Source: Guillardia theta CCMP2712
Taxonomy: Eukaryota > Protista > Cryptophyta
DNA: 64,000 bases
Assembly: GCF_000315625.1 (NCBI RefSeq)
Contig: NW_005434581.1
Coordinates: forward strand, 105,128-169,127
Direction: 5' to 3'
Part shown: positions 21,417-61,566 of the stretch, in pieces
Layout of the letters: each line of letters opens with the position of its first letter
Numbering within the stretch: the stretch's first letter is position 1
Position numbers and translations under genes: made by a program
The notes under the pieces: generated by a model
What the model saw: only the letters and a program-made list of their open reading frames with translations
Told to the model about the DNA's origin: nothing
The model's database searches: none

Positions 21417-22790
21417 CTAGTGTTCAGAAACTTCCTTGGCGAACGTCATCTTTTGCACGAGGTCCTCGAATATGTCGTATGTCATCACCTGCTCAGGAGT
21501 GAGAGGCCCCACAGCTCCTCCTCCTCTCCTCTCCCCACAGCTCCTCCTCCCCTCCTCTCCCCACAGCTCCTCCTCTCCTCTCCCCATAGCTCCTCCTCTC
21601 CTCTCCCCATAGCTCCTTCCCTCCTCTTCCCACAGCTCCTCCTCTCCTCACATGATGTGAGCCCATCATCTTCTTCACTTCCTGCTTCGTCGTCTGCACC
21701 CCGATGCTCAACCTGCACCACGTGAGCTGACCAACGGGGGAGCCTCCTCCCCTCACAGCGCATGGTACAGCTCCTCCTCGTCGATGCTCCCGTTCTTGTC
21801 GTTGTCGAAGTTGTCGAACACTGACCGTACTCGCTCTGTGCGCTGGTCAGGAACAAGGAGCAGCGATCGTGAGGAGAGGAAGGGGAAGAGCTGGTACGAG
21901 ACGGAGAGGGTGGGGATGGGACGGAGTACACACCTGCGAAGTTCTGGACTGTCAGACCGTCCCCGAGCTCACCCAGCAGCGCTCCTCTAGCTTTCTTCCA
22001 GTGCTGCAGCTCGTGCGTCATGTGCTCCATCTCTTTGCCTCTTTCCCATCCCAGCCAGGATCGGATCGCCACCACCAAGATCAGCTTCACCATGTCCACC
22101 TCTCCGAACACCGTCTCGATCACGTCCGCTCCCACCATGAAGTCCATCCCAAGCATGATGCCCCGGCTGAGCTGCATGCGGCATGTCAAGATGCTCTCCT
22201 GCGCGGTGGCGCTGAGGGAGTGGAGGAAGAAGCCGGGGAGAATGTCGCGGATCACTGGGATGATGACGCCCATGGTCGAGAAGACCATGATGGCGACGCC
22301 GATGATGTTCAGCAGGTCGACAACAACATGGAAGATGGGTATGCTGTAGGCTGAGAGGCTCATGTGATGGTGATGGTGATGTCCTCCGTGGTGAGCATGC
22401 GACGAGCTCATGACTCCGCCATTGTGCGAGGGAGCGCTACAGGAGTTGGAGCTTCGCTGCATCTCGTTACGCAGCTGCTCGACTTGGCTGAGGACATCTA
22501 CCATCATCTGTTGAAGCTTGCCTGCCAGAAACGTGGTGAAAACATGTCAGCACTGGGTCGGCGTACAGAGAAATGGACCTGAACATGTCATGAACATGAT
22601 GGAAAAGTGCGGTAGGTGAGTGGGAAGAGATGCCCTGTCAACCAGAGCAGTCAGACACTGTTGTGGTGTAAATGAGACATCGCCGGAGCAAGATGCTTCA
22701 GAGCACAAGCTCAAACCCTCCTCCCTGATTCGCACTGCTTCCTTTGCTGATCCGGCTGTTCACACCTCCCCTGTTCATCTCCTGCGCCAT
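21417..22790 (-). CDS. DUF1622 membrane domain fused to a His-rich linker and C-terminal EF-hand(s); start uncertain
   Basis: CRMQLSRGIMLGMDFMVGADVIETV..KLILVVAIRSWL matches the DUF1622 pattern (R.xL.RgillGLef.vaADi..Tv..IRt.L); a downstream exon reads VRSVFDNFDNDKNGSIDEEEL (canonical EF loop); last exon VMTYDIFEDLVQKMTFAKEVSEH*. Confidence 0.78.
21508..21650. repeat. Degenerate minisatellite (CCCACAGCTCCTCCTC-type units, about 20-26 bp) in the last intron of the DUF1622 gene
   Basis: About six imperfect tandem copies. Confidence 0.8.
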
Positions 22791-24824: not shown

Positions 24825-25231
24825 GGGTTCACCGTCACGGTGCCACCTCTACTCTCCTGATTGATCGAAGGCCGCACATCGGGGACTTCTCAGTTTTGAT
24901 CTCTTGAGGGGAACCGGCTCGGGCCGCCGCCGGGCCGGGCGGAGGGGGGAGGGGGGGCGGCAGGGCGGCGGTGGCCCGGCAGCACTATAACTAGAGCCAG
25001 CCGGGCCCTAGTTACAGGGCGGTTATACGGTTACTAACAGTTAGCGGGTAGGGTTTGGGCGCTATGGAAGAGAGAAGATTGCGGGTCATGGCGTCGGAGA
25101 GGAGGAGGGAGGAGGAGGCGAAGGATAGAGAGAAGAAAGCGAGAAGGAAGTAGCTGATAGGTAAGGATGGGAGATACTGAGCCTCGCGCTTGAGTCACAC
25201 ACAGCTGCTCAGGTAGGAGAAGAAATTAACG

Positions 25232-28200
25232 ATGCTCAACGGGATGGCTCCAAGAAGGCTTGAGTCGACGAGGAGTATCAGAAGCATACGAAGCAAGGAT
25301 GGGAAGGGGCGGCAGAAGGAAGCATACACCCTGGGAGCCATCCTCTCTCACCTGAGAACAAGGATCTTGTCACTGGTGGGGGAGGAAAGCGTGCATGAAG
25401 TGGACGAGATGCTAAACAAGGAGAAGGTGATGAAAGAAGTCGAAGAGTTTGCGAGGGAGGGAGGCAAGTCGAAGCTTGTGTTCTTCTTGCAAGCAGACAG
25501 TCAAGAGGCCGAGGATGGCGCTGCTGCCAAGCCAAGGATCTTCCTTGTAGACCCACAAGAGAGTGTTCTCGTGGACAGGTGTATTTTCTTCTTGAAGCGC
25601 AAGTCGGACAGCATCAACGCAGACACTTTCGAAGAAGATGTCATGGTCGGAGACTTCTGCACCCCATTGCTTGACAGCATCTCCCTCCTCCTCTCCGAGG
25701 TTCACAGCCCGATTCTGCACGAGAAGAGCTACGACTGGAAGGGGATCGGAAAGGAGACGGTGTACACGTGCCTGAGCTGCGTCGACCAGCTCATGAACCA
25801 GGTGAACGAGGAGATGAGCACCATGTACGGGGGGGTGAGCCTCGAGCCGGTGGAGGATTGGATCATGGAGGACCCCCGGGCCGCCGAGGGCTTGTACAAC
25901 AAGATGGCGCTGGACGACGAGGTGTTGGGGTACATGGAGCTGGTTCTGGAGCAGTGGTGCATTCAGGTACACACGGTCTTGCACGAGAACGAGATCAACC
26001 GAGTGATGTCGCTCGGCCCGCGATCAGAAACAACATGGTGGCGCAAAAGATCCACAAAGTTGTTCAAGATCATGGAGCAGCTCAAGGGTAGCCAGGCGAA
26101 GCTTGTGCTGGGGGTGTGCACGGCAGCCAAGTCCAAGGGTGTGAAGCGTTGGAGACAACTGGATGAACAGATGACAGATGCAATGAATGATGCAAAAGAC
26201 AACGTCCGGTTGCTCTCAGACATTGATCTCTTGCTGGAACCCTTCTACTCTGGCGATCTATCGCAGGTGAAGCTAGCTCTGCCGGATCTGTTTGCAAGGC
26301 TGAAGATGATATGCTCTGTGTCGAAGTACTACAACACTCGGAGACGAAGCACTCGTCTGTTGTTCAAGGTCGGACATCAACTGATACAGATATCTCGTAA
26401 AACTCTGCATGATGGAGGGAAGATTCTCGAGCTTGAACCTGACAAGGCGTTGGAGAGTGTGAGAACAGCCTTAGAGCTCTGCAGACGGTATGAAGAACAT
26501 GTCGGCAACCTCCGGGAAAGACTGCTCTCGCAGAAAGGAAAGAGTTTGAACATCAAGAATGAAGATGTAATGGAAGAAGTAGCTCAGTTCATCACACGGC
26601 TCGAGGCGGTCGAGGTGATCCTGGAGACTATCCATCAGTTTTCAACGCTTAAACGAGCCCCGATAGACGGACTCGATGTGATCAAGCTGGCATTTGACGA
26701 AGTGCTAGCCCTGTTAAGATCCAAACCTTACGACATCCTTGATCACTCAGTGACCAAGTTTGAAGAAGACTTCCACGAATTTCAAGAAAGAATATCAGCC
26801 ATCGAAGTCTCAATACGTGACTTCATAGAAGTTTCCTTCGATGAAATCCCCAGCATCGAATCTGCTCTGGACCTGCTCTCCAAGCTTGAATCGATCCTAC
26901 AACGGGACTCATTCAAGGTGCACCTCGAAGACAAGTACAACCTGATCTTCTACCATTACGGTCAGAAGCTGGAGAGCATTCAAGAGATGTACGACAAACT
27001 GAAATCGAATCCTCCCCACCTAAGGAATGTTCCGACTGTTCCCGGCAACGTCCTGTGGGTGCGACATCTGCTGTACATGGTGGAGGATCCAATGAAAAGG
27101 TTCAAATGCAGTAAAGTCATCATGACGGCACCAGAGTCGAAGAAGATCATCCGCTTGTTCAACCGGGTCGCCAAGACTCTCATCGAGTACGAGACTCTCT
27201 GGCTGCAAGCTTGGTTCAAGTCCATCGAGCAGTCCAAGATTGGTCTGCAAGCCACCTTGCTTGTTCAGCACCCTGTCGACTCTCGACTTTGCGTCAACTT
27301 CGACCCAGCAGTCACCCAGCTGATCCGAGAAGGTAAAATCTTACGTCGTCTCGGGATCAAGTTGCCCACCTCAGCTCTCAATATTCTCCAGCAGGAGTCC
27401 AAGTTCAAGAGCTACTACGACAGCCTTAACAACTTCCTCAGCGAATATTACAAGTTCCTCAACCGCATCCCCAAGAGCGTCCAGCCGCTGCTGGAGTCTC
27501 ACCTGCAGGAGATGGAGCTGGTGATCCGACCGGGCCTCGTCTCTCTGACTTGGCAGTCGATGAACATCGACGGTTACCTCGTCCGCATGCACAGCTTGCT
27601 GCTCAAGCTGAGTGTCCTCTTGCAAGGAGTTTCAGACGTGTTGGACCTCCGTGTCGCCAAGAACCTCAGTTTCATCCGAAACATGTCTCTCATTCGCTTT
27701 CCTGAAGAAGGCAAATTTTCTATCGACGAGTTCATAACGTTGCAGAAGCAAGAGCTGCAGAAGTATGCAAGCTTTCTACAGGGGAAACGGTCAGAGGTGC
27801 TAGAGAGCCTGCATGAAGTCATAGACAAGATCAGACATTTCTCATCTGAGTTTGGCAACGAGTGGACCATTCTTCCGGATCGCATAGAAGATTTCATGCA
27901 GTTTCACTGTAACTCATTCTATCACTCAATCTTGTGTTCTGTTCGAAGATCTTTCAACGATATCAAGAGGCGACTGGGGTCGAGGGTGCATGCGTCATTC
28001 CTGTTTCTAGAGAGACCTTTCTTCAACCTCGATGTTGAGCTCTCCATTCCCAGCATCGTCGCTCAACCTTCACTCAGTATAGTTCAAGATGCGATCAATG
28101 AAACCGGGAGGTTGGTTCTACGAGCTACCAAGTCGTTGAAAGTGATTGCGAGCTCCTCGAGCAACAACAAGAGTGAGACTTACTATGATAGAATAGCAGC

Positions 28201-31200
28201 AGATCGCGTCATCGTGCAATCGGTATTGCTCCTTGCTGGCAGCGTGGAGGGATCGAGGAGGACTGTGTTGGAGTACCTGCAGGGCTTTCAACGATTTCAG
28301 TTCCTGTGGGTGGAGGACAAGCTCGCTGCCTACTCGAGTTTCGTCAAGTCGAAGCCAGACCTCTTCCACTATGAGGAACAGTTCATGAAGTTCTCGCGAA
28401 TAGAAGCCGACATCAAGGCCATCGCTCCCATGCACAACATCGGCTGCATCAGCCTCCGCACCCAATCCCTCAAGTACTCTCTCATCGCCGAGACCTTGGC
28501 GTGGAAGTCCATGTTTGCCAGGAAGCTGCACGCCAAGGCCAAGGAGGAGATGGACTCGCTGGTATCCTTCATTAACACCAACGTGGAATGGCTCAGCAAG
28601 GAAGTCTCGACCATCGAAGACGTCGGCATGTCCCTGCAGTGGCTCCGCGATCTTCAAAGCAAAGAGAGTGACATCGAACAACAGATCGTTCCAATCGAGA
28701 ACATGTACAATATCTTAACCAAGCACGAAGTCAGGATACCCAAGGAAGAGGCAGAGACTTTGATGAATTTGAGAAAGATGTGGGATAGAGCCATTGAAAT
28801 GGGCCATGAAAGAAGCTCCAGGTTGTCAAGCTTACAAGCAGGCTTCCGTCGAGAAATAGTCAAGTCTGTGAAATCGTTTTCTCTCGAAGTGATTCAGTTC
28901 TGCAATGATTACGATATGAACGGGCCGATGCTCGCAGGCCTAGCAAATGCAGAGGCCATGGAGCGTTTAAAGAAGTATCAGGTGTTGTACAGCGAGAAGG
29001 AGGCGAGGATGAGGTCCTTGCAAGAGAGGGAGGAGATGTTTGGGTTGAACGTGACGTTCTACAAGGATCTTGACAGAGTGCGGCAAGAGATCGAGCTCTT
29101 CAACTCTCTTTACACCTTGAACGCGAGGGTCGAGGAGCACATCTCCCACTTCTCCGAGAGCCTCTGGAACGAGGTGCAGGGTCAGATCCCCTTTCTCGAG
29201 TCTTCGCTCGAGAGCTTCGCGCACGAGCTCGAGAGCCTCCCGGCCATCCTCCGCGACTGGTCCGCGTACAAGAGCCTCAGGTCGACCATTCGTGACACCC
29301 TGGCGGCCGTTCCCGTCCTTTCCCTCCTTAGCCATCGGGCCATCCAGAGGCGGCATTGGGTACAGATCATGAACACAGGGGGACAGCAGGTGCTGCTTGC
29401 TCACTTGTGGGCTGACGACTCACTGACGGAGCCTCGCAGGTCAGCCTGTGGAACCTAGACCCGGGCTCGATGAAGCTGAAGCAGATACTGAACCTAAACT
29501 TGACTTCCATCCAGGGAGACATCGACGACATTTGTGAGAGCGCGAAGAAGGAGCAGGAGATGGAGGACAAGGTCTCGTCGCTGAGCGAGCAGTGGAATGA
29601 CAGGCAGCTCCTGTTCTCCGACTACAACGGGGGAAAGTCCTCGATCCTCGACCCTCACGGGATAACCGAGCTGATGGAGACTCTCGACGTGTCCATCAAC
29701 GACCTGCTGGCTATCTCCGGCTCCAAGACGGCTGAGGCGATCTCGGAAGACATCGAGACATGGCTAGCGAAGCTGTCGGAGGTATCGGAGGTGATGGAGA
29801 TGTGGAACCACGCGCAGTCCATGTGGATTCATATGGAGCCCATCTTCTCCGACGGGAACATCTCCTTGGAGCTGCCCAATGATGCGAAACGATTCGCTAA
29901 GATCGATCTCAACTACTCGCGGCTCATGTCTAGGGCCCTTCACAACAGGAACGTGGTCAACTCCTGCACATCAGACCATCAGATCAAGAGCTTGCTGCCG
30001 CACCTGACGGAACAGCTCGAACAGTGCCAGAAGTCTCTCGTCAACTTTCTCGAGAGAAAGCGCGACGCTTTCCCGCGCTTCTTCTTTGTTTCCGACAATA
30101 TCCTCCTCACGCTCTTGAGCGAACAAGAAAGCTCCTCATCTCTCGAGCAAAACCTGTCGACGATGTTCTGCGGCATCAGAGGGTTTGTGAGCGAGGGATC
30201 GGAGAGCGGGGGGAGGGAGATAACGGGGGTGATCTCAAGGAATGTTTCGGACGAGGAGAGCGTGCTGTTGTCAAACCCCGTCAGTCACAACTCAAAGTTC
30301 GAGCTGCTGCTCCGAGACGTCTTGTCCGAGACGCAGGTCAGTCTGAGGCAGGCCGTCCACTCAGCCATCAAGAAGGGAGTTGCGTACGTCCTGTCTGACC
30401 TCCTCGACAACTTCCAGGATCAGGTCTGCACTCTAGCACTGCACGTTCACTGGACTCAGGACACGATACATGCCTTGTCTCGGGCTAAGACCGAGAAGAA
30501 CCTGATGAACGCGGCCAACAAGCGGAACGTGAACAACGTCGTTGAGCTCACGAAGTTGCTCAACTCAAGCTTGACAAGCCTGCTGAGGGTGAAGGTCCAG
30601 AACCTCCTGCTGCTGCAGTTGTACCTCAAGACCTGCTTCGAAGAGATGTTCAACCTCAAGGTCTCGAGCCCCGACGACTTCTTGTTCCTCCGGCATGTGA
30701 ACGTCTTCTTCATGTCCAGCGATGAAGCCCTGGACGTGAGCATCGCTGGGATCAGATTGAGGTACGGGAACGAATACCTGGGACTCAACAACCGGGTGGT
30801 CGTGACGCCGACGACTGATCGATGCTTCGTCTCCTTCTGCCTCTGCCTCTCATCCCTCAGCTGCAATCACTTTGTGGGGGCAGCAGGATCGGGGAAGAAG
30901 ACCACCATCAGGGAGTTTGCTCGCTTCTGCGGGAGGTTCTTCGTCTTCTTCAACTGCAGCGAGCTAGTGGACATCAGCTACATGGAAAGGTGCTTCAAGG
31001 GCGTGCTCAAGAGCGGCTCCTACGGCTGTCTCTTGCACATCGACAAGACCCTGGCCAGTGTGCTCTCAGTCAGCTCCCAGTATCTCTTCGACTTCCTCCA
31101 AACTTTCAGGGCCCGGCAAGCCTTGTCCCTAGAGGACAGCCTTGCGGGAGCCAAGAAGCAACCTGATGCCGCCATGTTCTTCACGTCGGCCGTGCTGCCG

Positions 31201-34200
31201 GGGGGGGCGAGCCTCCCGCACGTCTTGCCGTCCCTTCAGCATCACCTGCGGACATTCATGGCCGTCAGCCCCGACAAGCAGGGGATCCTCGACGTGAAGC
31301 TTGCCTCGCTGGGGGTCGAAGAGCATCTGAAGCTCGCAAGGAAGCTGAATGTGCTGTCTGACTTGTTCCCTTGCGTCATCAACAGAGTTGAGTATGTGCC
31401 GATCATCAGCATGCGCAACCTGATTGCAATCTGCAACAAGGTCGGCAAGTTCAAGCAGGAGGGTCTCCACAGGAGCGACACCATCTCGCTGCTGGTTGCG
31501 ATCAAAGAGAATGTTCTGTCGTGTCTGCACACGTCAGACAAGATGCTGGTGATGGGCTTGCTGGCTGACTTGTTCCCCGGTCAAGAAGTGGACGTGCCGT
31601 ACAGTCAAGACCTGCTGCAACTCAAGGACGGGATTGTGAACCATCTCACCAAGGAGAAGATGGACAAGCAGCCTCTCTGGATAGAGAAGATCCTCAACAT
31701 CTACGACGGGATCTCAACTCGTCTCGGTGTGGTGGTGATCGGTCAGTCTGGCCTCGGAAAGACTTCCATGATATCAACTCTTGCGCAAGTCCTCTCAAAC
31801 CAGGAGAACCCGCACAAGGTTGCCATCCAGCGAATGTTCAGCAAGAGCCAGGACGTGTCGCAAATGTTTGGACACTTCTGCCCCTCCACCGGCAAGTGGC
31901 TGGACGGGACCTTCTCCTTCCTCTGGAAGAGATCGACCTACCAGAACGGCTTCAACACTTGGATCTGCCTTGACGGATCCATCGACGACTCGTGGGTCGA
32001 GCAGCTGGGCTCTACCCTGAGCGGCTTCCAGGTGTTGAACCTGTCCAACGGAGATCGCATTCCTGCCAAGGTCGGGACCAACTTGATCTTCGAGACAGAC
32101 AGCCTGCAGAACGCCTCTCCTTCCTTCCTCTCCTCGACCTGTGTCGCCTACGTGTCTTCGTCTGCCCTGCCTTGGCGCTCTGTCGTGAACAAGTGGATAG
32201 AGGAAAGGAACACAGACGAGAGGACGCTGCTCCGATCACTCTTCGACAGGTCCTGCCCTTCCTCCCTCCCTCCTCCATCTCGCTCTTGCTCGCTCTCTCT
32301 TCCTCTTTTTCTCCTTCACTCAGAATCTCAGTCCATTCTCTCCTGCTCGCTTACCCGCACGTTCGCAGGTACTTGGATCAGGTCCTCCACTTCTTCAAGA
32401 TGCAGTGCTCCAGGACTATGGTCACGTTTGACAACTACGTTCCCCTCGCCATCACCCGCTACTTTGACTGCGCTTGCAAGTACCTTGACTTCCGTTGGGA
32501 CTCCAGCGGCGAGCCGTTCCTCGAGAAGGTCTTCATCTTCTGCTTGTGCTGGGCGTTCGGAGGTGTCATGGAGCCTGGGGATCGAGTCAAGTTCGGTCAG
32601 TTCCTGCACACCATGACTGACCTGCTCCCGACGGTTCCGTTCGGCGACACCCTCTTCGACTTCTTTCCTGATGACAACAGGATGGACTGGGAGCACTGGA
32701 AGACGAGGGTGAAGGAGTGGAACTATCAGAAGCTTGTCCTGCAGGAGCTCTTCGTGCCCTCGATCGAGACAGTCCGCAGCGACTACCTCCTCAAGTTCCT
32801 CAGCACCAAGAAGATGAACGTCCTGATCACGGGGACCCCAGGCTGTGGCAAGTCTACCCTGATGCAGCGATACCTGTCCAGCCACGACAGCGACAAGTTC
32901 ATATGGAGTTACATGTCGCTATGTCCGAGCTCGACGGTCGAGTCCTTGCTTGAATCTCTTCACTTCATCATCGAGAAGAAGCAGGGGCGCACCTACCTGC
33001 CTGAGAACGGCAAGGCCTGCACCGTCTTCGTCGACGACATCAGCTTGACTCCTGTCGACCCCTGGGGCGAGCAGAAGCTGTGCGAGCTGCTGCGGCAGCT
33101 GATGATAGACAACGGGTACTACAGCCATGAGCTGCCGAGCGAGTGGCGGACATTGATCGGGATCAACTACCTGGCAGCCATGAGCCACCCAGCACACACT
33201 CAGAAAGACATCTCAGTGAGGATGAAAGCTCAATTCGTTGCGATGAGTCTGGGGTCGACGAGTGACACGTCAGTCAACCAGATCTACTCTAGAGTCTTGG
33301 AGCGAGTCTACAAGAAGCGCAAGGCCAGGGATGAGCTGCTGGCGATCGCCAAGAAACTCCCGGAGATGACAAGTAGCCTACTGCAGCACGTGCGATCCAA
33401 CCTGATAGTGAGGAACAAGAACCCCCTGCACACCTTCAACTTCCACGACATGATCGCCATCTTCACGGGAGTGCTCAGATGTCACCCTGAAGACATGGAG
33501 TCTTGCAACGTGCTCGTCAGGCTGTGGCAGCATGAGTGTGAGAGGACGTTGAAGGACAAGCTCGAGGATGAGCATGAGAGAGACATCGTTGCTGCGGGAG
33601 TCAAGTCCGTGCTTGACACCTTCAGCATGTCGAGTCACCTCAAAGACGGCTCGACCAGCGGCGAACACTGCTTGTTCGGGGTGTTGGGCAACGGGAAGCG
33701 CTCTTACTGTCACGTCTCTGACATGGAGAAGCTGACGGAGGACGTGGAGATGTGCATGGAGGCCAACGGGTTCAGTCGCGAGCTCTTCGATGACGTCATC
33801 AATCAGATGCTGAGGATCGCGCGAGCCATCGGAATACCCCGCAAGTCGATCATGCTCGTCAGTCTGCCTGGGTCAGGGAGGAAGTGGATTTCTAGGCTGG
33901 CAGCTCGCATGTTGTCATCGGACGTGGTCGAGGTGGACTCGACTCACAACTTGGAGGAGACGATCTTGACCTGCTACAAGACAGCCGGCCTGGAGGCGAA
34001 GCCCGTGACAGTGATAGTTGAAGATGCTGTGTTCGGGGACACGATGTGTTCTGAGACGTTGAACCAGCTGTTGAGCCATGGGAGGTATCCTTCACGGATC
34101 TCGAGGGTTGAACTTCAGAACTTCTCCGAGCTGATCCAGAAGGCGATAAAGAATGAGAGCCATACCCTCTTCTCCAACCGCCAGCTCCTTCGCATGCTCG

Positions 34201-37200
34201 AGTGCAGAGCCTGGGACAACTTGCACCTGGTCTTCTGCTTCGACCAGTACGAAAGGCTCCTGAAAGCTTGCAACGAGGTTCCTGCCATCCCCAAGTCGTG
34301 CTACGTTGACGTCTTCCTTCCTTGGAAGCCCGAGACCGCCCGGCAGGTCGCCTTTTCTCAGCTCAGAGATCTCCAGCTTGACTTCCAGGCCGACCCGGAG
34401 GTGATCTCAGCCTACGTGGCTGGTGCCCACACGCTGGTGCTGAGGAAGTCGAAGGAGTACGAGAAGAAGGTGAGGAGGGAGCTGCACGTGGGGCCCGGGC
34501 TGTTCCTATCGTACCTCGACACCTTCAAGCGGATCTTCCGCAACCAGGTTCAGTTCATGTCCAAGAAGATGGAGAGGACGCACGGAACCCTCAAGAAGCT
34601 CAGAGACGCGGGGTTTCACGTCGCCGAGCTCAAGAGCAGGCTCAAGGACCGCAGCATGGAGCTTGCGGACGCGCAGGCAGAGTCTGCGGGGATGCTGCAG
34701 GATATCAGCGACATAGTGAAGCAGGCGGAGAGGATGAAGGCGACGCTCATGACGGCCAAGAACCGTCTGGCCGAGCAGTCGCAGATGCTGCAGCAGGAGC
34801 GGGAGGGCCTCCAGAAGGACTTGGACTACGCCACCCCCTTCATCTCCGAGGCCTTCGAAGCCGCAAAGTCCATCCCCCCCGAGGAGGTGAAGTCGCTGGC
34901 GGGAAACAAGAACCCTCCTTTCACCACCCGCCTCATCTTCGATACCGTCCTCATCGCCCTCGCACGGCCTCTGAGGCCCGTGGAAGTGATTGACGGGAAG
35001 CTCTATCGGGACTCGTACCTCTACGTCGCTGACCTGCTGGGCGACGAGCAGCTGCTGGAGAAGCTGGTCAAGACGTGCGAGTCAAAGATCAACGGGGAGA
35101 CGGCTGAGCTGCTGATGCCTTACCTTGAAAACAAGGAGTTCCGTAACGCCAGCGCCAAGGTCTCGTCAAACCTCCTCCTGCTCGTCTCCTCCTGGGTCCA
35201 GAACCTTGTGAGGTACTACCAGACCATCGACAGGAGCTCGGTGAAGAAGTCGAGGATCGCGTCCTTGGAAGAGTCCGTGGAGGTGCTGGGAATGCAAGTG
35301 AAGGAGATCCAGTCGGAGTTGGATGTGGTACAGGAGGAGCTCGACAAGTTTCAAGACAACTTCGACGACTCGCTCAAAAACAAGCAGGCGGTGGAGAAGG
35401 ACGAGAGCACCTTACAACAGAAGCTATCCATCTCCACCTCCCTCCTCACGAACCTCCAGCGCGAGAGGATACAGTGGATGAATGACCTGGAGGAACGCAA
35501 GAACGAGATGAAGAAGCTCGCGGGGGACTGCGGCATCGCCTCTGCCATGATGGTGTACCTGGGGCCCTTCAGCAAGGACGCCAGGACCGAGATCATGCAG
35601 TCACTTTCTTCCTGGTGCCACGAGTGTGAGATCGAGTTCTCCCACGAGCTTCACGTCCCCAAGTTCTTCACCACCCAGAACGAAATCAGCTCCTGGTTCC
35701 TCCAGGGCCTCCCCTGCGATGAGTTCTCCATCCAGAACGGCATCTTGACCTGGTACTGCAGCAAGCCGCCTGTCCTCATTGACCCACAGGAGCAGTGCGT
35801 CACGTGGCTGAGAGGGAAGCTCGACCCTCTCGTCGTCCATGGGGCCGCGTACGAGCACTCCATGCATAAGATCGAGAGCTCCGTCGTGCTGGGACGGGAG
35901 CTGGTCATCGTCGGGATGGAGGTTGACTTTCCCCGGAGCCTCCTCTCCCTCGTTCAGAACTTGAACGCGTACAAGAGGACCTCGGAGACCAAGTGCAGCC
36001 TGCTGGGCAAGGAGGTGGACATTCACAGCAACTTCCGGCTGTTCCTAGTCACGAACGCGAAGAGAGCAGGTTTCAAACCTCACATGTTTGACAAAGGAAC
36101 AGTCATCGACTTCTCCATCACGTTCAGCGGCCTAGAGGATCAGATCCTCAACACGGTGCTGCGGGAGGAGAACGCGACCCTGTACCAGGAGAAGTTCCAG
36201 CTCATGCGCAGGATCAACGACTTGCGGGAGAAGGTCGACGAGATGGACGAGGTGCTTGTGGAGGAGATCTCAAGACTCGACGGCAACCTCCTCGACGACC
36301 AGCCCTTCATGCAGAGCCTGGAGCTCAAGATAGCGACTCTGCACGAGACGGAGGAGGAGCTCAGCGCGGCTGAGGAGCAGGAGGCGGACGTGACCTCCAA
36401 GTGCGACGAGTATCGCTCGTTGGCGACCAGGGGAGCACACCTCTACACGGCAGTCTCTGACATGGCCGAGGTGAACCCCAGCTATGTCACCAACTGCAGC
36501 ATCTTCCACCAGGTCTTCACCTCCGCGTTCCCTGAGCGGGAGCGGATCATGTCGTTTGACAGCAGGCTCTCGTCCCTCCTGCAGCATTCGACGGACGCGG
36601 TGACGAGCTTCTTCTCGGGGGGGTACGACAGCAAGCACCGCATGATCTTCATGCTCCTAGTCGCCCTCAAGATCGCCCTAGGGGAGCAGGAGCATGCCGA
36701 GCCCGACTACCTCCTCTGCCTCGCTGGCTGCGGGTCGAGCCTGGAGATCTCGCTGGGACCCAAGAAGCACGCGGCCTGGATCTCCGACGCCGCCTGGCTC
36801 AATTGCGTCTTCCTCTCCGAGCGGATCCCCAAGTTCCAGAACCTGCTGGAGTCGCTGCACAAGAGTAACAGCGCGTGGAAGGGCTGGTACGAGAAGGAGA
36901 GCCCCGAGACCGACGCGTCTGTTGACCCCGAGCTGGACCTCCTGCACCGGCTGCTGCTCGTGCGAGCGATGCGGGAGGACAGGCTGTGGTTCGCTTGCGA
37001 CCTCTTCGTCCGTCAGACCGTCGGAGCGTCGAGAAGCCGAGGGTTCACGGAGCTGAACCTGGAGGAGAGCGTGCGGTACACCTCCCCGCGCACTCCCATC
37101 CTCCTTTTCACCGCCAAGCACGAGGACAGCATCGACCTGGCGACGGAGTTTTCGCGATCCAAGGGGAGGAGCCTCAACGTCCACGCGTTCGGGGAGGAGG

Positions 37201-38927
37201 AGCTGGGGGAGGCTGAGGGGCAGATCAAGCAAGCTGCCTCCAGGAGCTCCTGGCTGCTGCTGCATCACTGCGACAGCAACCAGCCTCTCATGCGCTTAGT
37301 CGAGACCTTCCTCCTCTCCTCCGAGGGCTCCTGGGACCCTGACTTCCGCCTGTGGCTCACGGTTTCGGAGAGGTCGCGGGTACCCCAAGAGCTCGCCCGC
37401 ATCTCCGTCAAGGTCTCTCGGGACAGGCCCAAGTCCATCAGGGACTCGATCTCCCTCTTCCGGCCCTCCTCCCTCCCCCTCGGCCCCTCATCGACGGAGG
37501 GAAGCAGGAGAGTCTGGGACACGTTCAAGACCCGCTGGCTGCTCTGCTTCGCGATTCTCCAGCAGAGAGGAAAGTTCTCCTCCTCCTCGTGGAACTCTCA
37601 GCTGGACCTGGAAGCGACCGACTGGAAGTACTCCAGCAGCGTGCTGGAGGACTTTTGCAGCTCCTTCCAGGACAGGTACGGGCTGAGGGAGATGGTGATG
37701 AGGATGAAGGAGCTGGTGGAGCAGCACCTGGTCGGGTCGAAGCAGCAGGACGAGGTCGATCGCAAGGTGCTGGCGACTTACCTGGACAGGTTCCTCGTGG
37801 AGAACTTGAGCAGCCAGCAGGTAGCCGAACTCCTCCAGGACCCCGCGAGCTCTGAGGTGCCCTTCGACCATATGCTCGACCTCCTCCCTCCCTCCGACGC
37901 TGCTGCTCAGTTCGGACTCTCCTCCTACCACGACCAGGCGTACAGGGTGAAGCTCGCAGACCAGCTCATGGAGGGGATGAAGCTGCTGACAACGCCAGCG
38001 GAGGAGGAGCAGGACGTGGAGGAGGTGGAGGAGGTGGTCAGGGACATCGCAACCAACATGCTCGCCAAGGTTCCTTCCCCGTGGAACACGGAGCAGGTGA
38101 AGCTCAGCACCAAGGGCAAGTTCAGCCGAGCTGCTATCACCATCTTCTTCAACCAAGAGATCGAGAGGATGCAGCGGGTGCTGAAGCTCGTCAGAAACAC
38201 CCTCCAGGCCCTCCTGCTCTCTATGTCCGGCACTCAGCAGCGGAACGACCGGACCCGCGTCCTGCTCAACACGCTCTTCGAGGCCATGGTCCCTGCTGAG
38301 TGGCTGGACGTCTCCTGGAACGTGACGTCACTGGGCGAGTGGATAGCGAACCTGATGCAGCGTCACGATCACCTGGCCAAGTGGATGGCCAAGAAGTCCT
38401 CGAACCAGTACTGGCTGGGCGGCATGTTCAACCCCCACGGCTTCCTACTTGCCATCAAGCAGGAGGCGGTGAAGAAGAACTTGTCCGCCGGCTGGTCTCT
38501 CGAGGATCTCTCCTTCGACATCCAGCCTGCGAGCGCTGCGAGCAAGCGGGAGACGCACGGGCAGGAGCAGGAGTTGTCGCAGGGGAACGCGGTCATCCTG
38601 TATGGCCTCTTCCTCGAAGGAGCCTCGTGGTCCCAGCGAGAGAGCGGCAGGCTCGTCGACCCTCCAGCTCGCACCCAGCTCAGCGACTTCCCTCGCCTCC
38701 TCCTCTCCGTCTTCCGCGAAGTCTCCACCAGCGATCCCAGCGCCGACCCCAGCTCGCACGCGGGGATCCGAGACACCCACGGTGTCATCTACATGTGCCC
38801 CTGCTACACCGGGCTGAGAAGGAGCAGGGAAAGCCTCCTCTTCATGGTTCCCATCTACACCGAAGAGCCTGCCATGGTCGCCCGTTGGACCCTCCGAAAG
38901 GTCGCGCTCGTGGCGAACAAGTTTTAA
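25232..38927 (+). CDS. Dynein heavy chain, axonemal outer-arm (DNAH5/8-like) architecture, highly divergent motor; introns at 29390-29439 and 32250-32368; true start may be ~25063
   Basis: Three long ORFs join in frame across two GT-AG introns; N1 tail, linker (KRDAFPRFFFVSD), YGNEYLG..VVTPTTDRC, P-loops GQSGLGKT and GTPGCGKS, coiled-coil stalk/MTBD, GLPCDEFSIQNG, GLEDQIL, WLGGMFNPHGFL and C-terminal YMCPCY..WTLRKVAL. Confidence 0.97.
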
Positions 38928-39142: not shown

Positions 39143-41989
39143 CTATCTCTGAATGCTCCAGTTCGACCCGACCTTCGACAATTTTCCGATCACCCCCTGC
39201 AAGGACAGCTGACTTTTCAGCTGTGCGTCCCGAGCTGACGACAAGCTGGAGTCCAGCTGGGAGGAGTTGCCGGCGGTTGCAAGGGTATTGATGTCCTCGA
39301 TGCGGACGGCAGGCTGAAGGGAAGCAGCGCGCGCGAGGTCTCTGGCGACCACGGGGATGAGTCGATGCCCTACGTCGGAGGAGGGAGCCTGGTCGCTGTT
39401 TCCGCTGGAGGAGGGAGGATGAGTAGGCTGCTTCTGGTCCCCTCCTGCTCCTCCTGCTCCTCCTCCCTCAACAAACTTGAGCAGCTGCGCAAGGGAGACC
39501 CCGTGCTCTACCGTCGAAGGCTGGGAAGACGCCGCCTCGCTTCCTCCCTCTGCCTTGCCCCTGTCCTGCTGCAGCAGCTTCATGTTGTGGATCTTGCTCT
39601 TGTTCTCTGCTATCCATTGACCCACTGCATCCCAGCCATGCTCCCCCAGCGCCCCGTTAGAATCTTTGTACCCATCTAGCAGTACATCGTAGTGCCGTGC
39701 CCGAGCCGGGGCAGATGCTACGTGCGCAGCGGGAGCTCTAGAGCTCCTTGAGGCTCCGTTGCTCTTGTTCTTCTCCAGCGTCTTCTCTATGGAGCCGAGG
39801 ACGAAGGAGAGGTACTCCACCGCTTCCGCCAGCTCCCCCAGCTCAGACGAGTCGTGCTGCTTTCCCAGCTCAGACGAGTCGTGCTGCTCTCCCAGCTCCC
39901 CGAAGGATCTCGAGCTCCTTGTTGAGAACTCCAGCTGCGCCCCAGCTCGAAACCTGCTGGAAGTTTGCGAAGTCTCCCTCTTGTTCATGTCCGGGGTCAC
40001 CTCATGCTGGTCTGATGCTGGGCTGGTGCTGGGAAGTGTGAAGTCGGAGCTGATCCTTCCATCTCCCCCTCCTCCTCCCTGCGGCTTGCCGGGAGGCGTG
40101 ATGGCGGAAGCGGATGGAGCTGTTCCTGCTATAGCTACTCCTGCAACGGAAGGAGAGGAGGGAGGGGAGAGAGACTTGGAGGAGAAGCCGGCGCGGTTGA
40201 TCGCCTTGCGGAAGTCTCGGAGGACGCGGACAGAAGATTCCTGCTCTCTGAGCTTGATGTTATTCTGCCGCATCACCTGCTTCACAATTTCCTTCCATCG
40301 GATAATCGCCACCGTCGCGTTGGGGTCACTGAAGTCGCGCTCCACGTCCAGACTTATCCTCCGTTGCTTATCCACCTCCATCTCCATGTCTCCCCCGAAC
40401 TGCTTCAGGATACGGTCGAACTTGACGGTCGAGATGAACATGCATGTCACTGGAGCCACTGACCACAGCTCGATCTTGGGCTTCACTCCATCCTTGACAA
40501 GCAGCATGTCCTCGCCGAAGGAGTTCCCGGGGTGCAGCGTGGAGAGCGTGCGGCCGTTGGAGAGGACCATGATGGCGGTGCCGGTGACGACGAGGTAGAG
40601 TCCTTCGTGGTACTTGTCATTGTTTGCCTTGAAGATCGGGACGAGCTCGGGGAACGTCAGCTGGCTCATCGCGTCCCAGATCTGGATGACGAATCGCTCG
40701 ATCGCCTCGCTCTGGAGGTTGGCGAAGAGAGGTATGCCCATGAGCAGCGACTCGTGCAGCTTGACCCGAAGCTCGAACGCCATGGAGCTCGGGAGGACCC
40801 GGACAAGGTCATGCTCGTTGCGGAAGGTCACCGAGGTCTCATGCTTGAACCTCACCCAGCTGAGAACTCTTTTCTGCAGATCAGCAGGCACGTCCTTCTC
40901 CCTCAGGTAGTCCGTCACGCGGTTGAGGAGCGAGGAGAGGTCCCGGGCCTGCTGATTCATCTGCATGACAGCATCCTGGATCTCTGCTAGAAGAGCGCCG
41001 AAGGCGAGGGCTGCTATGTACGCCAGGACGATACAAATGATCCGCTCCTCGGAGTTAGTGGCAGAGATGTCTCCGAAGCCGATGGTGCTGAAGATGGTGA
41101 CCACGAAGTAGGTGGCTATGACGTACTTGTCGAGCAGGCACGGGCTCGAGAAGTAGTGGTCGCCGTTGCACGTGAAGACTCCGTTGTCCTCGAGGAAGAG
41201 AAGGACATCCTCGTAGCTGTTGGAGTGCTCCTTCACCAGCCAGAACATGGAGGCGGAAGCGTGCTCGATGAGGGCGATGACGAGTAGAACTTTGAGGATG
41301 CGGGTGATGTTGGAAGGCAGGCGAAACGATCGAAGAATCTTGGAGATGATACCCGAAGTCGGGACATCGCTCTCGAGCATGGAGATCGCTCTGAAGGTCC
41401 TCAGAATCTTGAGCAGCCTGACGGGCTTCAGCATCCTAACAAGCCTGAACGACTGATCCCCTCCTGTCCCCCCTCGCTCACAGGCTTTAAGGGTGGCGAG
41501 CTGCATCCAAGTCAGACAGGCATGGAGGAGGCGGAGGAAGAGAGAAGAGATCACCTCCACGTAGGAGGCAGGGATCGAAGTGATGAGGTCGAAGAAGAGA
41601 CTCCGCTGTACATACGACAGCAACACTCTGCCCAAGTCGTCGACATACTCGTTGTGGATGAAAGTGCCCGTTACAAAGTTCAGCAAGATCTCCAACAGGA
41701 AGAACGAGTCCACAAACACGTCAAAGTACAAGGTCGGCGTCTTCACGCACGAGTCTGCCGTCCAGAAGAAGCCGGCGGCAAACGCGCTGCCAACCGCGGA
41801 GTAGAGCAGGAGGACAGAGGAAATAATAGATGTCCCCTTTGTAAAGGGAGAGAAAGGATGGATCAGCCGCGAGTGCGCATACGTCTCGCCCTCCTCCCCG
41901 ATCCCAAACCATCTCGTTTGCCATTTCTGGTACTTGAAAGATTTCATCACCCGATGGAGAAGCGCATGGTGGAGTTGGTTCCCTTCCAC
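39143..41989 (-). CDS. Voltage-gated K+ channel of the KCNH/HCN/CNG superfamily with a cNMP-binding homology domain
   Basis: IHPFSPF pre-S1, FFDLITSIP (S3), S4 FRLVRMLKPVRLLKILRTFR, pore YFVVTIFSTIGFGDI, C-linker, YLVVTG..GNSFGE; probable short in-frame intron at ~41503-41555. Confidence 0.93.
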   Translation of the reverse strand: MEGNQLHHALLHRVMKSFKYQKWQTRWFGIGEEGETYAHSRLIHPFSPFTKGTSIISSVLLLYSAVGSAFAAGFFWTADSCVKTPTLYFDVFVDSFFLLEILLNFVTGTFIHNEYVDDLGRVLLSYVQRSLFFDLITSIPASYVEVISSLFLRLLHACLTWMQLATLKACERGGTGGDQSFRLVRMLKPVRLLKILRTFRAISMLESDVPTSGIISKILRSFRLPSNITRILKVLLVIALIEHASASMFWLVKEHSNSYEDVLLFLEDNGVFTCNGDHYFSSPCLLDKYVIATYFVVTIFSTIGFGDISATNSEERIICIVLAYIAALAFGALLAEIQDAVMQMNQQARDLSSLLNRVTDYLREKDVPADLQKRVLSWVRFKHETSVTFRNEHDLVRVLPSSMAFELRVKLHESLLMGIPLFANLQSEAIERFVIQIWDAMSQLTFPELVPIFKANNDKYHEGLYLVVTGTAIMVLSNGRTLSTLHPGNSFGEDMLLVKDGVKPKIELWSVAPVTCMFISTVKFDRILKQFGGDMEMEVDKQRRISLDVERDFSDPNATVAIIRWKEIVKQVMRQNNIKLREQESSVRVLRDFRKAINRAGFSSKSLSPPSSPSVAGVAIAGTAPSASAITPPGKPQGGGGGDGRISSDFTLPSTSPASDQHEVTPDMNKRETSQTSSRFRAGAQLEFSTRSSRSFGELGEQHDSSELGKQHDSSELGELAEAVEYLSFVLGSIEKTLEKNKSNGASRSSRAPAAHVASAPARARHYDVLLDGYKDSNGALGEHGWDAVGQWIAENKSKIHNMKLLQQDRGKAEGGSEAASSQPSTVEHGVSLAQLLKFVEGGGAGGAGGDQKQPTHPPSSSGNSDQAPSSDVGHRLIPVVARDLARAASLQPAVRIEDINTLATAGNSSQLDSSLSSARDAQLKSQLSLQGVIGKLSKVGSNWSIQR

Positions 41990-47643: not shown

Positions 47644-53072
<5,429 letters not shown>

Positions 53073-60917: not shown

Positions 60918-61566
60918 GGCAGAGCATGGAGGGGAGGATTGGTGGAAGCAGGGGGAGAGGGAGAGAGGAGAGGGAGAAAGGACGGAGAGGAGGTAGCTGT
61001 GCTGTGAAGAGGAGGGAGGGGAGGGGAGGGGAGGGGAGGGGAGGGGAGGGGAGGGGAGGGGAGGGGAAGGGGGAGGGGAGGGTAGGGGAGGGAGGACGGG
61101 TTNNNNNNNNNNNNNNNNNNNNNNNNNNNNNNNNNNNNNNNNNNNNNNNNNNNNNNNNNNNNNNNNNNNNNNNNNNNNNNNNNNNNNNNNNNNNNNNNNN
61201 NNNNNNNNNNNNNNNNNNNNNNNNNNNNNNNNNNNNNNNNNNNNNNNNNNNNNNNNNNNNNNNNNNNNNNNNNNNNNNNNNNNNNNNNNNNNNNNNNNNN
61301 NNNNNNNNNNNNNNNNNNNNNNNNNNNNNNNNNNNNNNNNNNNNNNNNNNNNNNNNNNNNNNNNNNNNNNNNNNNNNNNNNNNNNNNNNNNNNNNNNNNN
61401 NNNNNNNNNNNNNNNNNNNNNNNNNNNNNNNNNNNNNNNNNNNNNNNNNNNNNNNNNNNNNAGGAGGGAGGGAGGGAGGGAGGGAGGGAGGGAGGGGAGG
61501 GAGGGTGGAGGAGGGATGGGAGAACTCCCGGAGGAAGGGAGCTGATCGCTGGGATGGCAGAGTGCC

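What the first reader, a model, noticed from the sequence alone, without database searches (positions are those of the whole stretch)
30760..31430. Full-length dynein heavy chain with an apparently dead AAA1 ATPase site (pseudo-motor)
Seen in sequence: the AAA1 Walker A reads GAAGSGKKTT (canonical GPAGTGKTET) and Walker B reads GSYGCLLHIDK (canonical GAWGCFDEFNR, so both acidic residues are lost). The sensor-I region FITMNPGYAGR is replaced by FFTSAVLPGGA, and HYDFGLR by PIISMR. The AAA4 P-loop is also altered (SLPGSGRK versus GVGGSGKQ), while AAA2 (GQSGLGKT) and AAA3 (GTPGCGKS, VFVDD) are retained. Established: AAA1 is the site whose hydrolysis drives the dynein power stroke. The ~13.5 kb reading frame, stalk and C-terminal domain are intact, so this does not look like a decaying pseudogene. 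Inference: a non-motile axonemal dynein paralog acting as a scaffold, brake or tether, analogous to animal DNHD1 but with an outer-arm gamma-type tail.
Basis: partly seen in the sequence, partly recalled or inferred. Interest (0 to 1): 0.8.

Follow-up and report, generated by a model that had tools for sequence, protein, structure and literature searches.

The report
Motor-dead outer-arm dynein heavy chain
This alga (apparently the cryptophyte Guillardia theta) keeps an intact 4,508-residue flagellar outer-arm dynein gene whose main ATP-burning site has lost its catalytic residues, so it probably serves as a non-motor part of the flagellum; animals have comparable "dead" dyneins, and this one lost its site separately.

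Summary
The gene has three exons (25232-38927, + strand) and two short GT-AG introns, and encodes a complete 4,508-aa dynein heavy chain.

- **AAA1 site.** Walker A reads GAAGSGKK, Walker B LLHIDK and sensor-I FTSAVLPGG. Canonical forms are GPAGTGKT, FDEFNR and ITMNPGY. All 145 nearest relatives keep GxxxxGK[ST], and none has lost both Walker B acids.
- **Conservation profile.** AAA1 is normally the best-conserved dynein domain. Here it keeps 41% of class-invariant positions, against about 78% in the tail.
- **Class.** The tail is clearly outer-arm gamma type (Chlamydomonas ODA gamma, DNAH5/8).
- **Not a pseudogene.** The frame is open. Hanusia phi has an orthologue 86% identical over exon 1. 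A marine metagenome orthologue still carries GKS and DE, so the Walker loss is specific to this lineage.
- **Genome context.** There are about 17 canonical dyneins and seven with a degenerate AAA1. All seven have outer-arm tails, four gamma-type and three beta-type.
- **Closest known.** DNAHX and DNHD1 of animals. This gene lacks the DNAHX insertions.
- **Not tested.** Non-motility is inferred.

The scan had already followed up sister cases on other contigs of this genome and had noted this same gene (s1-445561).

The parts
25232..29389 (+). Exon 1 (1,386 codons): start codon, gamma-type tail (DHC_N1 25934-27577, DYH2-5-8 coiled coil 28526-28786) and start of the linker (DHC_N2)
   Evidence: The best solved match is the Chlamydomonas outer-arm gamma tail at 862 bits. 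Hanusia phi P0174 aligns from residue 1 to 1386 at 85.7% identity.
29390..29439 (+). Intron 1, 50 nt, GT..AG, frame-preserving
   Evidence: The Pfam DHC_N2 profile continues without loss across the junction. The Hanusia protein stops making sense exactly at this point.
29440..32249 (+). Exon 2: linker (DHC_N2), AAA1 (AAA_6, 30763-31764) and the large AAA2 subdomain. The last two bases form a split codon with 32369.
30877..30906 (+). AAA1 Walker A, GAAGSGKKTT. The Lys is kept, and the Mg-coordinating Thr is replaced by Lys.
31015..31047 (+). AAA1 Walker B strand, GSYGCLLHIDK. Both acidic residues (DE) are replaced by LH.
31174..31212 (+). AAA1 sensor-I loop, MFFTSAVLPGGAS. The canonical Asn-Pro-Gly-Tyr is lost.
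31396..31419 (+). AAA1 sensor-II region, VPIISMRN. HYDFG is lost and the Arg is kept.
31741..31764 (+). AAA2 Walker A, GQSGLGKT, intact
32250..32368 (+). Intron 2, 119 nt, GT..AG, pyrimidine-rich, phase 2
   Evidence: Translation in the exon 2 frame turns into low-complexity text after this point. The exon 3 frame matches the AAA lid from 32403.
32369..38927 (+). Exon 3: AAA2 lid, AAA3 (32730-33251), AAA4 (33783-34535), stalk and microtubule-binding domain (34572-35603), AAA5 (35691-36323), AAA6 (37086-37415), lid (37542-37919), C-terminal domain (37995-38912), stop TAA 38925-38927
32832..32855 (+). AAA3 Walker A, GTPGCGKS, fully canonical. Walker B VFVDD lies at 33024-33047.
33861..33887 (+). 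AAA4 Walker A, SLPGSGRKW. The Lys is replaced by Arg and the first Gly is lost.

Best explanation
This is a selectively maintained paralogue of the outer-arm gamma dynein heavy chain (the class of Chlamydomonas ODA gamma and human DNAH5/8). Its principal ATPase site, AAA1, can no longer hydrolyse ATP.

Shown here:
- The gene is intact, spliceable and 4,508 codons long.
- Its tail is the best-kept part of the protein. In this class the tail binds the partner heavy chain, the intermediate and light chains and the docking site.
- AAA1 keeps the AAA+ fold and the Walker A lysine. It has lost the Mg-binding Thr, both Walker B acids and the sensor-I Asn.
- Canonical P-loops remain at AAA2 and AAA3.
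- The stalk and microtubule-binding domain are of normal length and partly conserved.

Inferred:
- The protein is built into an outer-arm-like complex through its tail, probably with a beta-type partner heavy chain.
- Its head cannot perform an ATP-driven power stroke. It would instead act as a passive or nucleotide-regulated microtubule-contacting, structural or regulatory element.
- Possible uses are local tuning of the beat, or a difference between the two unequal flagella.

The loss of the Walker residues happened within the Guillardia lineage. The nearest orthologue outside it still has GKS and DE.
For: 1. Motifs and their alignment to solved dyneins.
2. None of the 145 nearest relatives shares the loss.
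3. AAA_6 scores 182 bits, against about 413-523 bits in the canonical genes of the same genome.
4. Canonical G. theta gamma (contig 53) is 54-64% identical in AAA1 to distant gamma dyneins. This gene is 28% identical.
5. Retention of the 485 columns invariant in nine canonical gamma dyneins: tail 78%, linker 74-90%, AAA1 41%, AAA3 77%, AAA5 76%, AAA4 51%, AAA6 40%. The control paralogue keeps 100%.
6. Tail class: 862 bits to the Chlamydomonas gamma tail, against 266 bits for the next class. In the tail tree the gene sits inside the gamma group, which a 100/100 branch separates from the other two-headed classes.
7. Not a pseudogene: no stop in 4,508 codons, and intron phases are preserved. The Hanusia phi orthologue is 85.7% identical over 1,386 residues with the same start. 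The Tara metagenome orthologue is 43-48% identical in tail and linker.
8. The fold is kept: the AlphaFold model has pLDDT 83.9, and the best Foldseek matches are dynein AAA1 at TM about 0.8.
9. Possible partners exist: three other degenerate-AAA1 genes of this genome carry beta-type outer-arm tails.
Against: - There is no expression or protein evidence for this gene.
- Non-motility is inferred from sequence only.
- The Walker A lysine, the sensor-II Arg and intact AAA2/AAA3 P-loops leave room for nucleotide binding and some conformational cycling.
- dN/dS against the only orthologue with DNA is saturated (dS above 1), so purifying selection rests on ORF integrity and orthologue identity.
- The Hanusia fragment does not reach AAA1, so the age of the loss is bounded on one side only.
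- The conserved proline at the entry to the second stalk coil is lost, so microtubule binding is uncertain.
Confidence: 0.6

Rival explanations
1. It is a non-motile heavy chain that works mainly outside the assembled axoneme. As proposed for animal DNAHX, it would be a permanently 'primed' partner that pairs with another heavy chain in an inhibited (phi-like) particle, for storage or intraflagellar transport.
For: DNAHX is also a duplicate of the same outer-arm class with a degenerate AAA1. A clade joining this gene to amphibian DNAHX-type proteins is not rejected (AU p = 0.69). The AlphaFold AAA1 model superposes better on ATP or phi-state dyneins (TM about 0.8) than on post-power-stroke or apo ones (about 0.61-0.66). 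That last point is only a weak hint.
Against: The protein is 4,508 aa, not about 5,270. It has no insertion in the stalk, microtubule-binding domain or AAA4 small domain, and those insertions are what lock DNAHX. The best tree places it with the cryptophyte gamma genes (87/75). The orthologue keeps canonical Walker residues, so AAA1 decay is not inherited from a common ancestor with DNAHX.
Confidence: 0.2
2. It is still a working motor. ATP turnover at another site (AAA3 has a perfect P-loop and DD), or residual binding at AAA1, drives linker movement.
For: The AAA3 Walker A is more canonical than in several canonical gamma dyneins. AAA2 is intact, and the AAA1 Lys and sensor-II Arg are kept. 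Linker, AAA5 and AAA3 keep 74-90% of invariant positions.
Against: By established knowledge of dynein mechanochemistry, AAA1 hydrolysis is required for the power stroke in every dynein tested, and AAA3 only gates it. Both Walker B acids, the Mg-binding Thr and the sensor-I Asn are gone here. 57 of 97 class-invariant AAA1 positions are changed.
Confidence: 0.1
3. It is an unexpressed relic, a pseudogene that has not yet acquired a stop.
For: No expression data could be obtained. The whole motor is unusually divergent, at 25-35% identity to canonical gammas.
Against: It shares only 27-37% identity with its nearest paralogue, yet has no stop or frameshift in 13.5 kb. Both introns keep GT-AG and phase. 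The tail keeps 78% of invariant positions. A Hanusia phi sequence in EukProt is 86% identical in frame over 1,386 residues. To my knowledge, not checked here, that sequence is transcriptome-derived. Codon-position GC structure is strong even in AAA1 (GC2 0.37, GC3 0.80).
Confidence: 0.07
4. It is an assembly or reading artefact that imitates a dead site.
For: None found.
Against: The divergence is spread over the whole 334-residue domain, not confined to a few bases. The marine orthologue shares derived features (GAA in place of GPAG, GCL in place of GCF).
Confidence: 0.01

Closest known systems
DNAHX (Chai et al. 2025, bioRxiv 10.1101/2025.01.18.633724); probably the class-12 dyneins of Kollmar 2016
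   Same: Both are duplicates of the outer-arm heavy chain class called alpha in sea urchin, gamma in Chlamydomonas and DNAH5/8 in humans. In both, the AAA1 motifs are degenerate and vary between members, the outer-arm-type tail is retained, and the protein is proposed to be non-motile and to pair with a second heavy chain.
   Different: DNAHX is about 5,270 aa, with insertions in the stalk/MTBD and AAA4 small domain. It keeps a Walker B and has Thr-to-Val in Walker A. It is reported only in animals and stated to be absent from protists. This protein is 4,508 aa without such insertions and has lost Walker B entirely. Its orthologue still has canonical Walker residues, so its AAA1 decay is independent. 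Common descent is neither supported nor rejected.
DNHD1 (animal 'orphan' dynein heavy chain)
   Same: It is a full-length dynein heavy chain whose AAA1 lacks the catalytic Walker B residues, as stated in the DNAHX preprint. It is needed in flagella and is thought to be non-motile.
   Different: No specific sequence relationship was seen here. DNHD1 has many disordered insertions and no clear gamma-type tail. No direct comparison was run.
Canonical outer-arm gamma heavy chain (Chlamydomonas ODA2 product, DNAH5, DNAH8; the two canonical G. theta genes on contigs 53 and 155)
   Same: The domain order and length are the same. The tail is homologous from end to end (862 bits), and the motor is best matched by DNAH5 (836 bits). 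The tail groups with the cryptophyte gamma genes in the tree.
   Different: The AAA1 catalytic motifs are lost. The conservation gradient is inverted, with the tail better kept than the motor. In the motor tree it falls outside the canonical gamma clade on a long branch.
'Orphan' dyneins of Guillardia theta in Kollmar 2016 (PMC5100056)
   Same: That survey lists G. theta dyneins that fall outside the 17 classes, group near classes 12/13 and keep outer-arm-like tails. This gene is very probably one of them.
   Different: The paper reads them as motors with altered force production and does not mention the state of the ATP sites. The identity of this gene with a named orphan could not be checked, because no supplement is held.

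Membership tests
Dynein heavy chain | Full architecture: tail (DHC_N1), linker (DHC_N2), six AAA modules, stalk/MTBD and C-terminal domain, in order | tested here: met
   Pfam reports DHC_N1, DYH2-5-8_CC, DHC_N2, AAA_6, AAA_lid, AAA_7, AAA_8, MT, AAA_9, Dynein_heavy, AAA_lid_11 and Dynein_C, all above cut-off and collinear.
Outer-arm gamma class (Chlamydomonas gamma, DNAH5/8) | Tail homologous to gamma-class tails rather than to beta, I1-alpha or I1-beta tails | tested here: met
   862 bits to the Chlamydomonas gamma tail over residues 63-1385. Other gamma orthologues score 575-707 bits, and the next class 266 bits. In the tail tree the gene lies inside the gamma group, split from the other classes by a 100/100 branch.
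Outer-arm gamma class (Chlamydomonas gamma, DNAH5/8) | Motor domain groups with gamma-class motors | tested here: inconclusive
   The best solved matches for exon 3 are DNAH5, DNAH8 and Chlamydomonas gamma at 836-797 bits, against 647 bits for I1-beta. In the linker-AAA1-AAA2 tree the gene and its Tara orthologue sit outside the canonical gamma clade among long branches.
Outer-arm gamma class (Chlamydomonas gamma, DNAH5/8) | Catalytically competent AAA1 (GPAGTGKT, DEFNR, sensor-I Asn) | tested here: not met
DNAHX | Unusual length (about 5,270 aa) from insertions in the stalk/MTBD and AAA4 small domain | tested here: not met
   4,508 aa. The stalk/MT block is 344 residues and aligns over 333 columns to the canonical paralogue. 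There is no large insertion.
DNAHX | Monophyly with animal DNAHX sequences | tested here: inconclusive
   The best tail tree puts it with the cryptophyte gamma genes (87/75). A tree that holds it together with amphibian DNAHX-type P0097 and P0013 is not rejected (AU p = 0.69).
DNAHX | AAA1 locked with ATP, motor fixed in the pre-power-stroke state | not testable with these tools
   This needs a structure or biochemistry.
DNHD1 | Sequence orthology to animal DNHD1 | not tested
   No named DNHD1 turned up among the hits whose names were looked up. No direct comparison was made.

The most novel reading that the evidence does not exclude
Guillardia builds whole outer-arm-like complexes from matched motor-dead heavy chains. 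All seven degenerate-AAA1 dyneins of this genome carry outer-arm tails, four gamma-type (including this gene) and three beta-type. This mirrors the gamma/beta pairing of a normal outer arm and the proposed class-12/13 or dynein-X pair of animals. On this reading a protist independently evolved a family of non-motile 'pseudo-arms', placed in one of its two unequal flagella or in a zone of the axoneme to shape the beat.
Probability: 0.25. Interest if true: 0.75.

Novelty: new variant of a known kind. Interest (0 to 1): 0.55.

Why it matters
Non-motile dynein heavy chains were recognised only recently and only in animals (DNAHX, DNHD1). The DNAHX authors state that the type is absent from protists.

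This gene shows the same outcome in a cryptophyte: an outer-arm gamma duplicate that keeps its tail and loses its engine. A still-canonical orthologue shows that the catalytic loss happened separately. Together with its six sister genes, it suggests that turning outer-arm motors into non-motors is a recurrent way of tuning flagella.

It also offers a unicellular system in which the role of such proteins could be tested. The gene family itself was already catalogued as 'orphans' in 2016, and this scan has already reported sister cases. The increment is therefore real but moderate.

Tried and rejected
- **Orthologues of the AAA1 region.**
  - The word-indexed search with exon 2 found nothing above 29% identity.
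  - The search with exon 3 found no orthologue.
  - The metagenome scan with an alignment of this gene and the Tara piece found one unrelated dynein at 29%.
- **P0086.** This protein (genome GCA_041443065.1) looked like an orthologue in the first tree. It is as close to the canonical G. theta gammas (37%) as to this gene (38%), so I dropped it as evidence.
- **dN/dS.** Against the Tara orthologue dS is saturated (1.1-1.3 by NG86, and YN00 fails). The ratios of 0.37 for the linker and 0.61 for AAA1-AAA2 are only rough. The Hanusia entry has no DNA.
- **Mixture-model tree.** The tree of the 82-row linker-AAA1-AAA2 set did not finish. Only the LG+G4 quick tree exists for that region.
- **Origin.** 'Ancient class shared with DNAHX' against 'cryptophyte duplication' could not be settled.
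- **Joined protein.** Every search, alignment and tree used the exons as separate references, so no full-length query was run. Full-length relatives were reached only through the representative search with exon 2.


Full report
**What is there**

The window is contig 93 (105128-169127) of an 87.1-Mb assembly of 669 contigs. Earlier notes of this scan name the organism as the cryptophyte Guillardia theta. Three things fit that name:
- an 86-90% identical Hanusia phi orthologue;
- the many dynein paralogues that Kollmar 2016 reports for Guillardia.

On the + strand three long open frames follow one another: 25232-29458, 29470-32616 and 31992-38927. They join through two short GT-AG introns:
- Intron 1 is 29390-29439 (50 nt).
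- Intron 2 is 32250-32368 (119 nt, phase 2).

Across both junctions the Pfam profiles continue without missing positions. The product has 1386 + 936 + 1 + 2185 = 4,508 residues and ends at TAA 38925-38927. Pfam finds the complete dynein heavy chain architecture in order: DHC_N1, the DYH2-5-8 coiled coil, DHC_N2, AAA_6, AAA lid, AAA_7, AAA_8, MT stalk, AAA_9, Dynein_heavy, AAA_lid_11 and Dynein_C.

All searches, alignments and trees used them as separate references.

**The observation**

Alignment to solved outer-arm dyneins (DNAH8, Chlamydomonas gamma, DNAH5) places them as follows:

| AAA1 element | This gene | Canonical | Window coordinates |
|---|---|---|---|
| Walker A | GAAGSGKKTT | GPAGTGKTET | 30877-30906 |
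| Walker B | GCLLHIDK | GCFDEFNR | within 31015-47 |
| Sensor-I | FFTSAVLPGGAS | FLTMNPGYAGR | 31174-31212 |
| Sensor-II region | VPIISMRN | HYDFGLRN | 31396-31419 |

- The Walker A lysine and the sensor-II arginine survive.
- The Mg-coordinating Thr, both Walker B acids and the sensor-I Asn do not.
- Among the 145 nearest relatives in the 1.84-billion-protein representative library that cover both motifs, all keep GxxxxGK[ST] and 134 keep DE. The other eleven keep at least one acidic residue.
- The AAA_6 profile scores 182 bits here, against about 413-523 bits for about 17 other dynein genes of the same genome.
- AAA2 (GQSGLGKT; LDG) and AAA3 (GTPGCGKS; VFVDD) are intact. The AAA3 P-loop is in fact more canonical than in several canonical gamma dyneins.
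- AAA4 reads SLPGSGRKW instead of GVGGSGKQS. The Lys-to-Arg change is also seen in otherwise canonical relatives (P0019, P0027), so it says little.

**How unusual the domain is**

The canonical G. theta gamma gene on contig 53 is 54-64% identical in AAA1 to gamma dyneins of distant eukaryotes, and AAA1 is its best-conserved domain. This gene is 28% identical there. Its tail (DHC_N1) is 42% identical to contig 53.

I also took the 485 alignment columns that are invariant in nine canonical gamma-class dyneins and counted how many this gene keeps:

| Region | Invariant positions kept |
|---|---|
| Tail | 78% |
| Linker | 74-90% |
| AAA1 | 41% (40 of 97) |
| AAA2 large subdomain | 69% |
| AAA3 | 77% |
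| AAA3 lid | 37% |
| AAA4 | 51% |
| Stalk/MTBD | 59% |
| AAA5 | 76% |
| AAA6 | 40% |
| AAA6 lid | 36% |

The canonical paralogue on contig 155 keeps 100% over the linker, AAA1 and AAA2L columns it was aligned for. The usual gradient of a conserved motor and a variable tail is therefore inverted.

The fold is not lost. AlphaFold2 on an alignment of 34 sequences gives pLDDT 83.9 and pTM 0.71, with the expected strand-helix order. Foldseek returns dynein AAA1 modules at TM about 0.8.

In the microtubule-binding domain the NPP, IFD and E..EL..PY signatures are kept. The proline at the entry to the second coil is lost. There is no large insertion.

**Which dynein it is**

- Exon 1 matches the Chlamydomonas outer-arm gamma tail at 862 bits over residues 63-1385.
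- The gamma orthologues of trypanosomes, Tetrahymena and mammals follow at 575-707 bits.
- The next class (I1-alpha, DNAH10) scores 266 bits.
- Exon 3 is best matched by DNAH5, DNAH8 and Chlamydomonas gamma at 836-797 bits.

The genome holds four genes with clearly gamma-type tails, matching exon 1 at 34-40% identity:
- this one;
- contig 1, also with a degenerate AAA1;
- contigs 53 and 155, both canonical.

**Tail tree**

A careful tree of the tail used LG+C20 PMSF on 46 rows and 703 columns.
- This gene, Hanusia phi P0174 and the Tara contig L047 form a clade (100/98).
- That clade is sister to the three other G. theta gamma genes (100/98), with moderate support for the union (87/75).
- All of these lie inside the gamma-type tails, which a 100/100 branch splits from the other two-headed classes.
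- Contig 1 groups with the canonical pair, so its AAA1 decayed separately from this gene's.

**Motor tree and DNAHX**

In the linker-AAA1-AAA2 tree (LG+G4, quick) this gene and the Tara pieces fall outside the canonical gamma clade among other long branches. I read that as rate acceleration and possible long-branch attraction.

A tail tree that forces this clade together with amphibian DNAHX-type proteins is not rejected (AU p = 0.69). The constrained search even found a slightly better likelihood than the quick free search. P0082 and P0097 are 'gamma chain-like' proteins of Rhinatrema and Hymenochirus; P0082 is 5,251 aa and carries GDHGVGKT. The deep origin is therefore unresolved.

**Orthologues and the age of the loss**

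- **Hanusia phi.** EukProt EP00960_Hanusia_phi_P052484 (P0174, 1,399 aa) aligns with exon 1 from the same start Met to residue 1386 at 85.7% identity, with two gap openings. It loses sense exactly where intron 1 begins. It does not reach AAA1.
- **Marine metagenome.** Two contigs (ENA ERZ17293822 and a Tara Oceans scaffold; L047, L048) encode an orthologue. Identity is 43% in the tail, 47-48% in the linker and 33-35% in AAA1-AAA2.
  - Its AAA1 reads GAADAGKSTS and GCLDEMQR, so the Ser and both Walker B acids are still there.
  - Sensor-I is already degenerate (TMSGPLD).
  - It keeps 50 of 97 invariant AAA1 positions.
  - GAA in place of GPAG and GCL in place of GCF are shared with this gene.

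The picture is a clade whose AAA1 was already relaxed. The Guillardia (perhaps Guillardia plus Hanusia) branch then lost the catalytic residues outright. Whatever the deep phylogeny, the catalytic loss is independent of the one in animal DNAHX.

**Pseudogene or not**

The gene shares only 27-37% identity with its nearest paralogue, yet it has no stop or frameshift in 13.5 kb. Both introns keep their splice sites and phase. The tail remains highly constrained, and an in-frame orthologue at 86% identity exists in another genus.

Codon-position structure is strong even within AAA1 (GC2 0.37, GC3 0.80). dN/dS against the Tara orthologue is saturated (dS 1.1-1.3). It shows only that AAA1-AAA2 (0.61) evolves faster than the linker (0.37).

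Earlier follow-ups of this scan report transcripts for sister genes. I did not test that.

**Context in the genome**

Besides about 17 canonical dyneins, seven genes have a degenerate AAA1. Their tails were classed against solved chains:

| Tail type | Gene | Score against the best-matching solved outer-arm tail |
|---|---|---|
| Gamma | this gene (contig 93) | 862 bits |
| Gamma | contig 1 | classed and the tail tree |
| Gamma | contig 11 at about 126 kb | 227 bits |
| Gamma | contig 11 at about 65 kb | 103 bits (weak) |
| Beta | contig 69 at about 415 kb | 605 bits |
| Beta | contig 69 at about 96 kb | 346 bits |
| Beta | contig 21 | 55 bits (weak) |

All seven are outer-arm types, in roughly matching gamma and beta numbers.

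**Literature**

- Kollmar 2016 (PMC5100056) catalogued G. theta dyneins. The paper noted 'orphans' that group near classes 12 and 13 and keep outer-arm-like tails. It proposed that such proteins sit at outer-arm positions with altered heads, and it did not discuss the ATP sites.
- Chai et al. 2025 (bioRxiv 10.1101/2025.01.18.633724) described DNAHX as follows:
  - it is a non-motile duplicate of the same outer-arm class, about 5,270 aa long;
  - insertions lock the motor, and the AAA1 motifs are degenerate and variable;
  - it pairs with a second heavy chain;
  - it is stated to be absent from protists;
  - the authors add that DNHD1 lacks Walker B.
- I found no paper on this in cryptophytes.

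**Mechanism proposed**

Shown:
- a complete gamma-type heavy chain with a conserved tail;
- a folded but catalytically stripped AAA1;
- intact AAA2 and AAA3 P-loops;
- a stalk of normal length.

Inferred:
- The tail takes it into an outer-arm-like complex, possibly with one of the beta-type degenerate chains.
- The head cannot perform an ATP-driven stroke. It acts as a static or nucleotide-modulated element that alters local sliding resistance or regulation.
- A DNAHX-like role in packaging or transport is the main alternative.
- Residual motor activity, a silent relic and an artefact are less likely.

**Verdict**

This is a new, independently derived variant of a recently recognised kind. The scan has already reported sister cases on other contigs of this genome.

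Noticed in passing
G000 contig 69 (about 95983-110000 and 414741-429000), contig 21 (about 285000-297000), contig 11 (about 55000-73000 and 125958-139000), contig 1 (341834-355000); loci L033-L046: All seven dynein genes of this genome with a degenerate AAA1 have outer-arm tails. Four are gamma-type (including this gene) and three are beta-type. The matched numbers suggest gamma/beta pairs of motor-dead heavy chains.
   Followed up: partly
L034/L042 (contig 11, about 126-139 kb) and proteins P0046, P0242-P0252: The degenerate gamma-type gene on contig 11 has a close relative (100/100 in both trees). That relative's 90% cluster holds 12 metagenome proteins of about 2,540-2,560 aa, with Walker A GSSGCGKSET. 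A second motor-degenerate lineage therefore seems widespread in environmental samples.
   Followed up: no
window 39143-41989 (-): This is a convergent neighbour whose end lies 216 nt from the dynein stop. It is a 948-aa ORF with Ion_trans, Ion_trans_2 and a cyclic-nucleotide-binding domain, i.e. a cNMP-gated channel-like protein. No link to the dynein was tested.
   Followed up: no
window 32832-32855: The AAA3 Walker A of this motor-dead gene (GTPGCGKS) is a perfect P-loop. Several canonical gamma-class dyneins, including human DNAH5 and the canonical G. theta gene on contig 53, deviate there (G..G.AKT or G..GVSKT).
   Followed up: partly
window 25232-38924: Third-position GC rises along the gene: 0.69 in exon 1, 0.80 in exon 2 and 0.85 in exon 3. 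It is well above the 0.57 of the canonical paralogue on contig 53. Unexplained.
   Followed up: no
window 24900-24965: There is a G-rich, low-complexity tract (runs of G with CGG) about 270-330 nt upstream of the start codon.
   Followed up: no
window 3018-5285 (+), 21485-22507 (-), 46139-47110 (-), 48452-49399 (-), 60087-62054 (-): The other ORFs have ordinary Pfam matches: lipase maturation factor (LMF1), DUF1622, PPR repeats, MutS domain V and a protein kinase.
   Followed up: no
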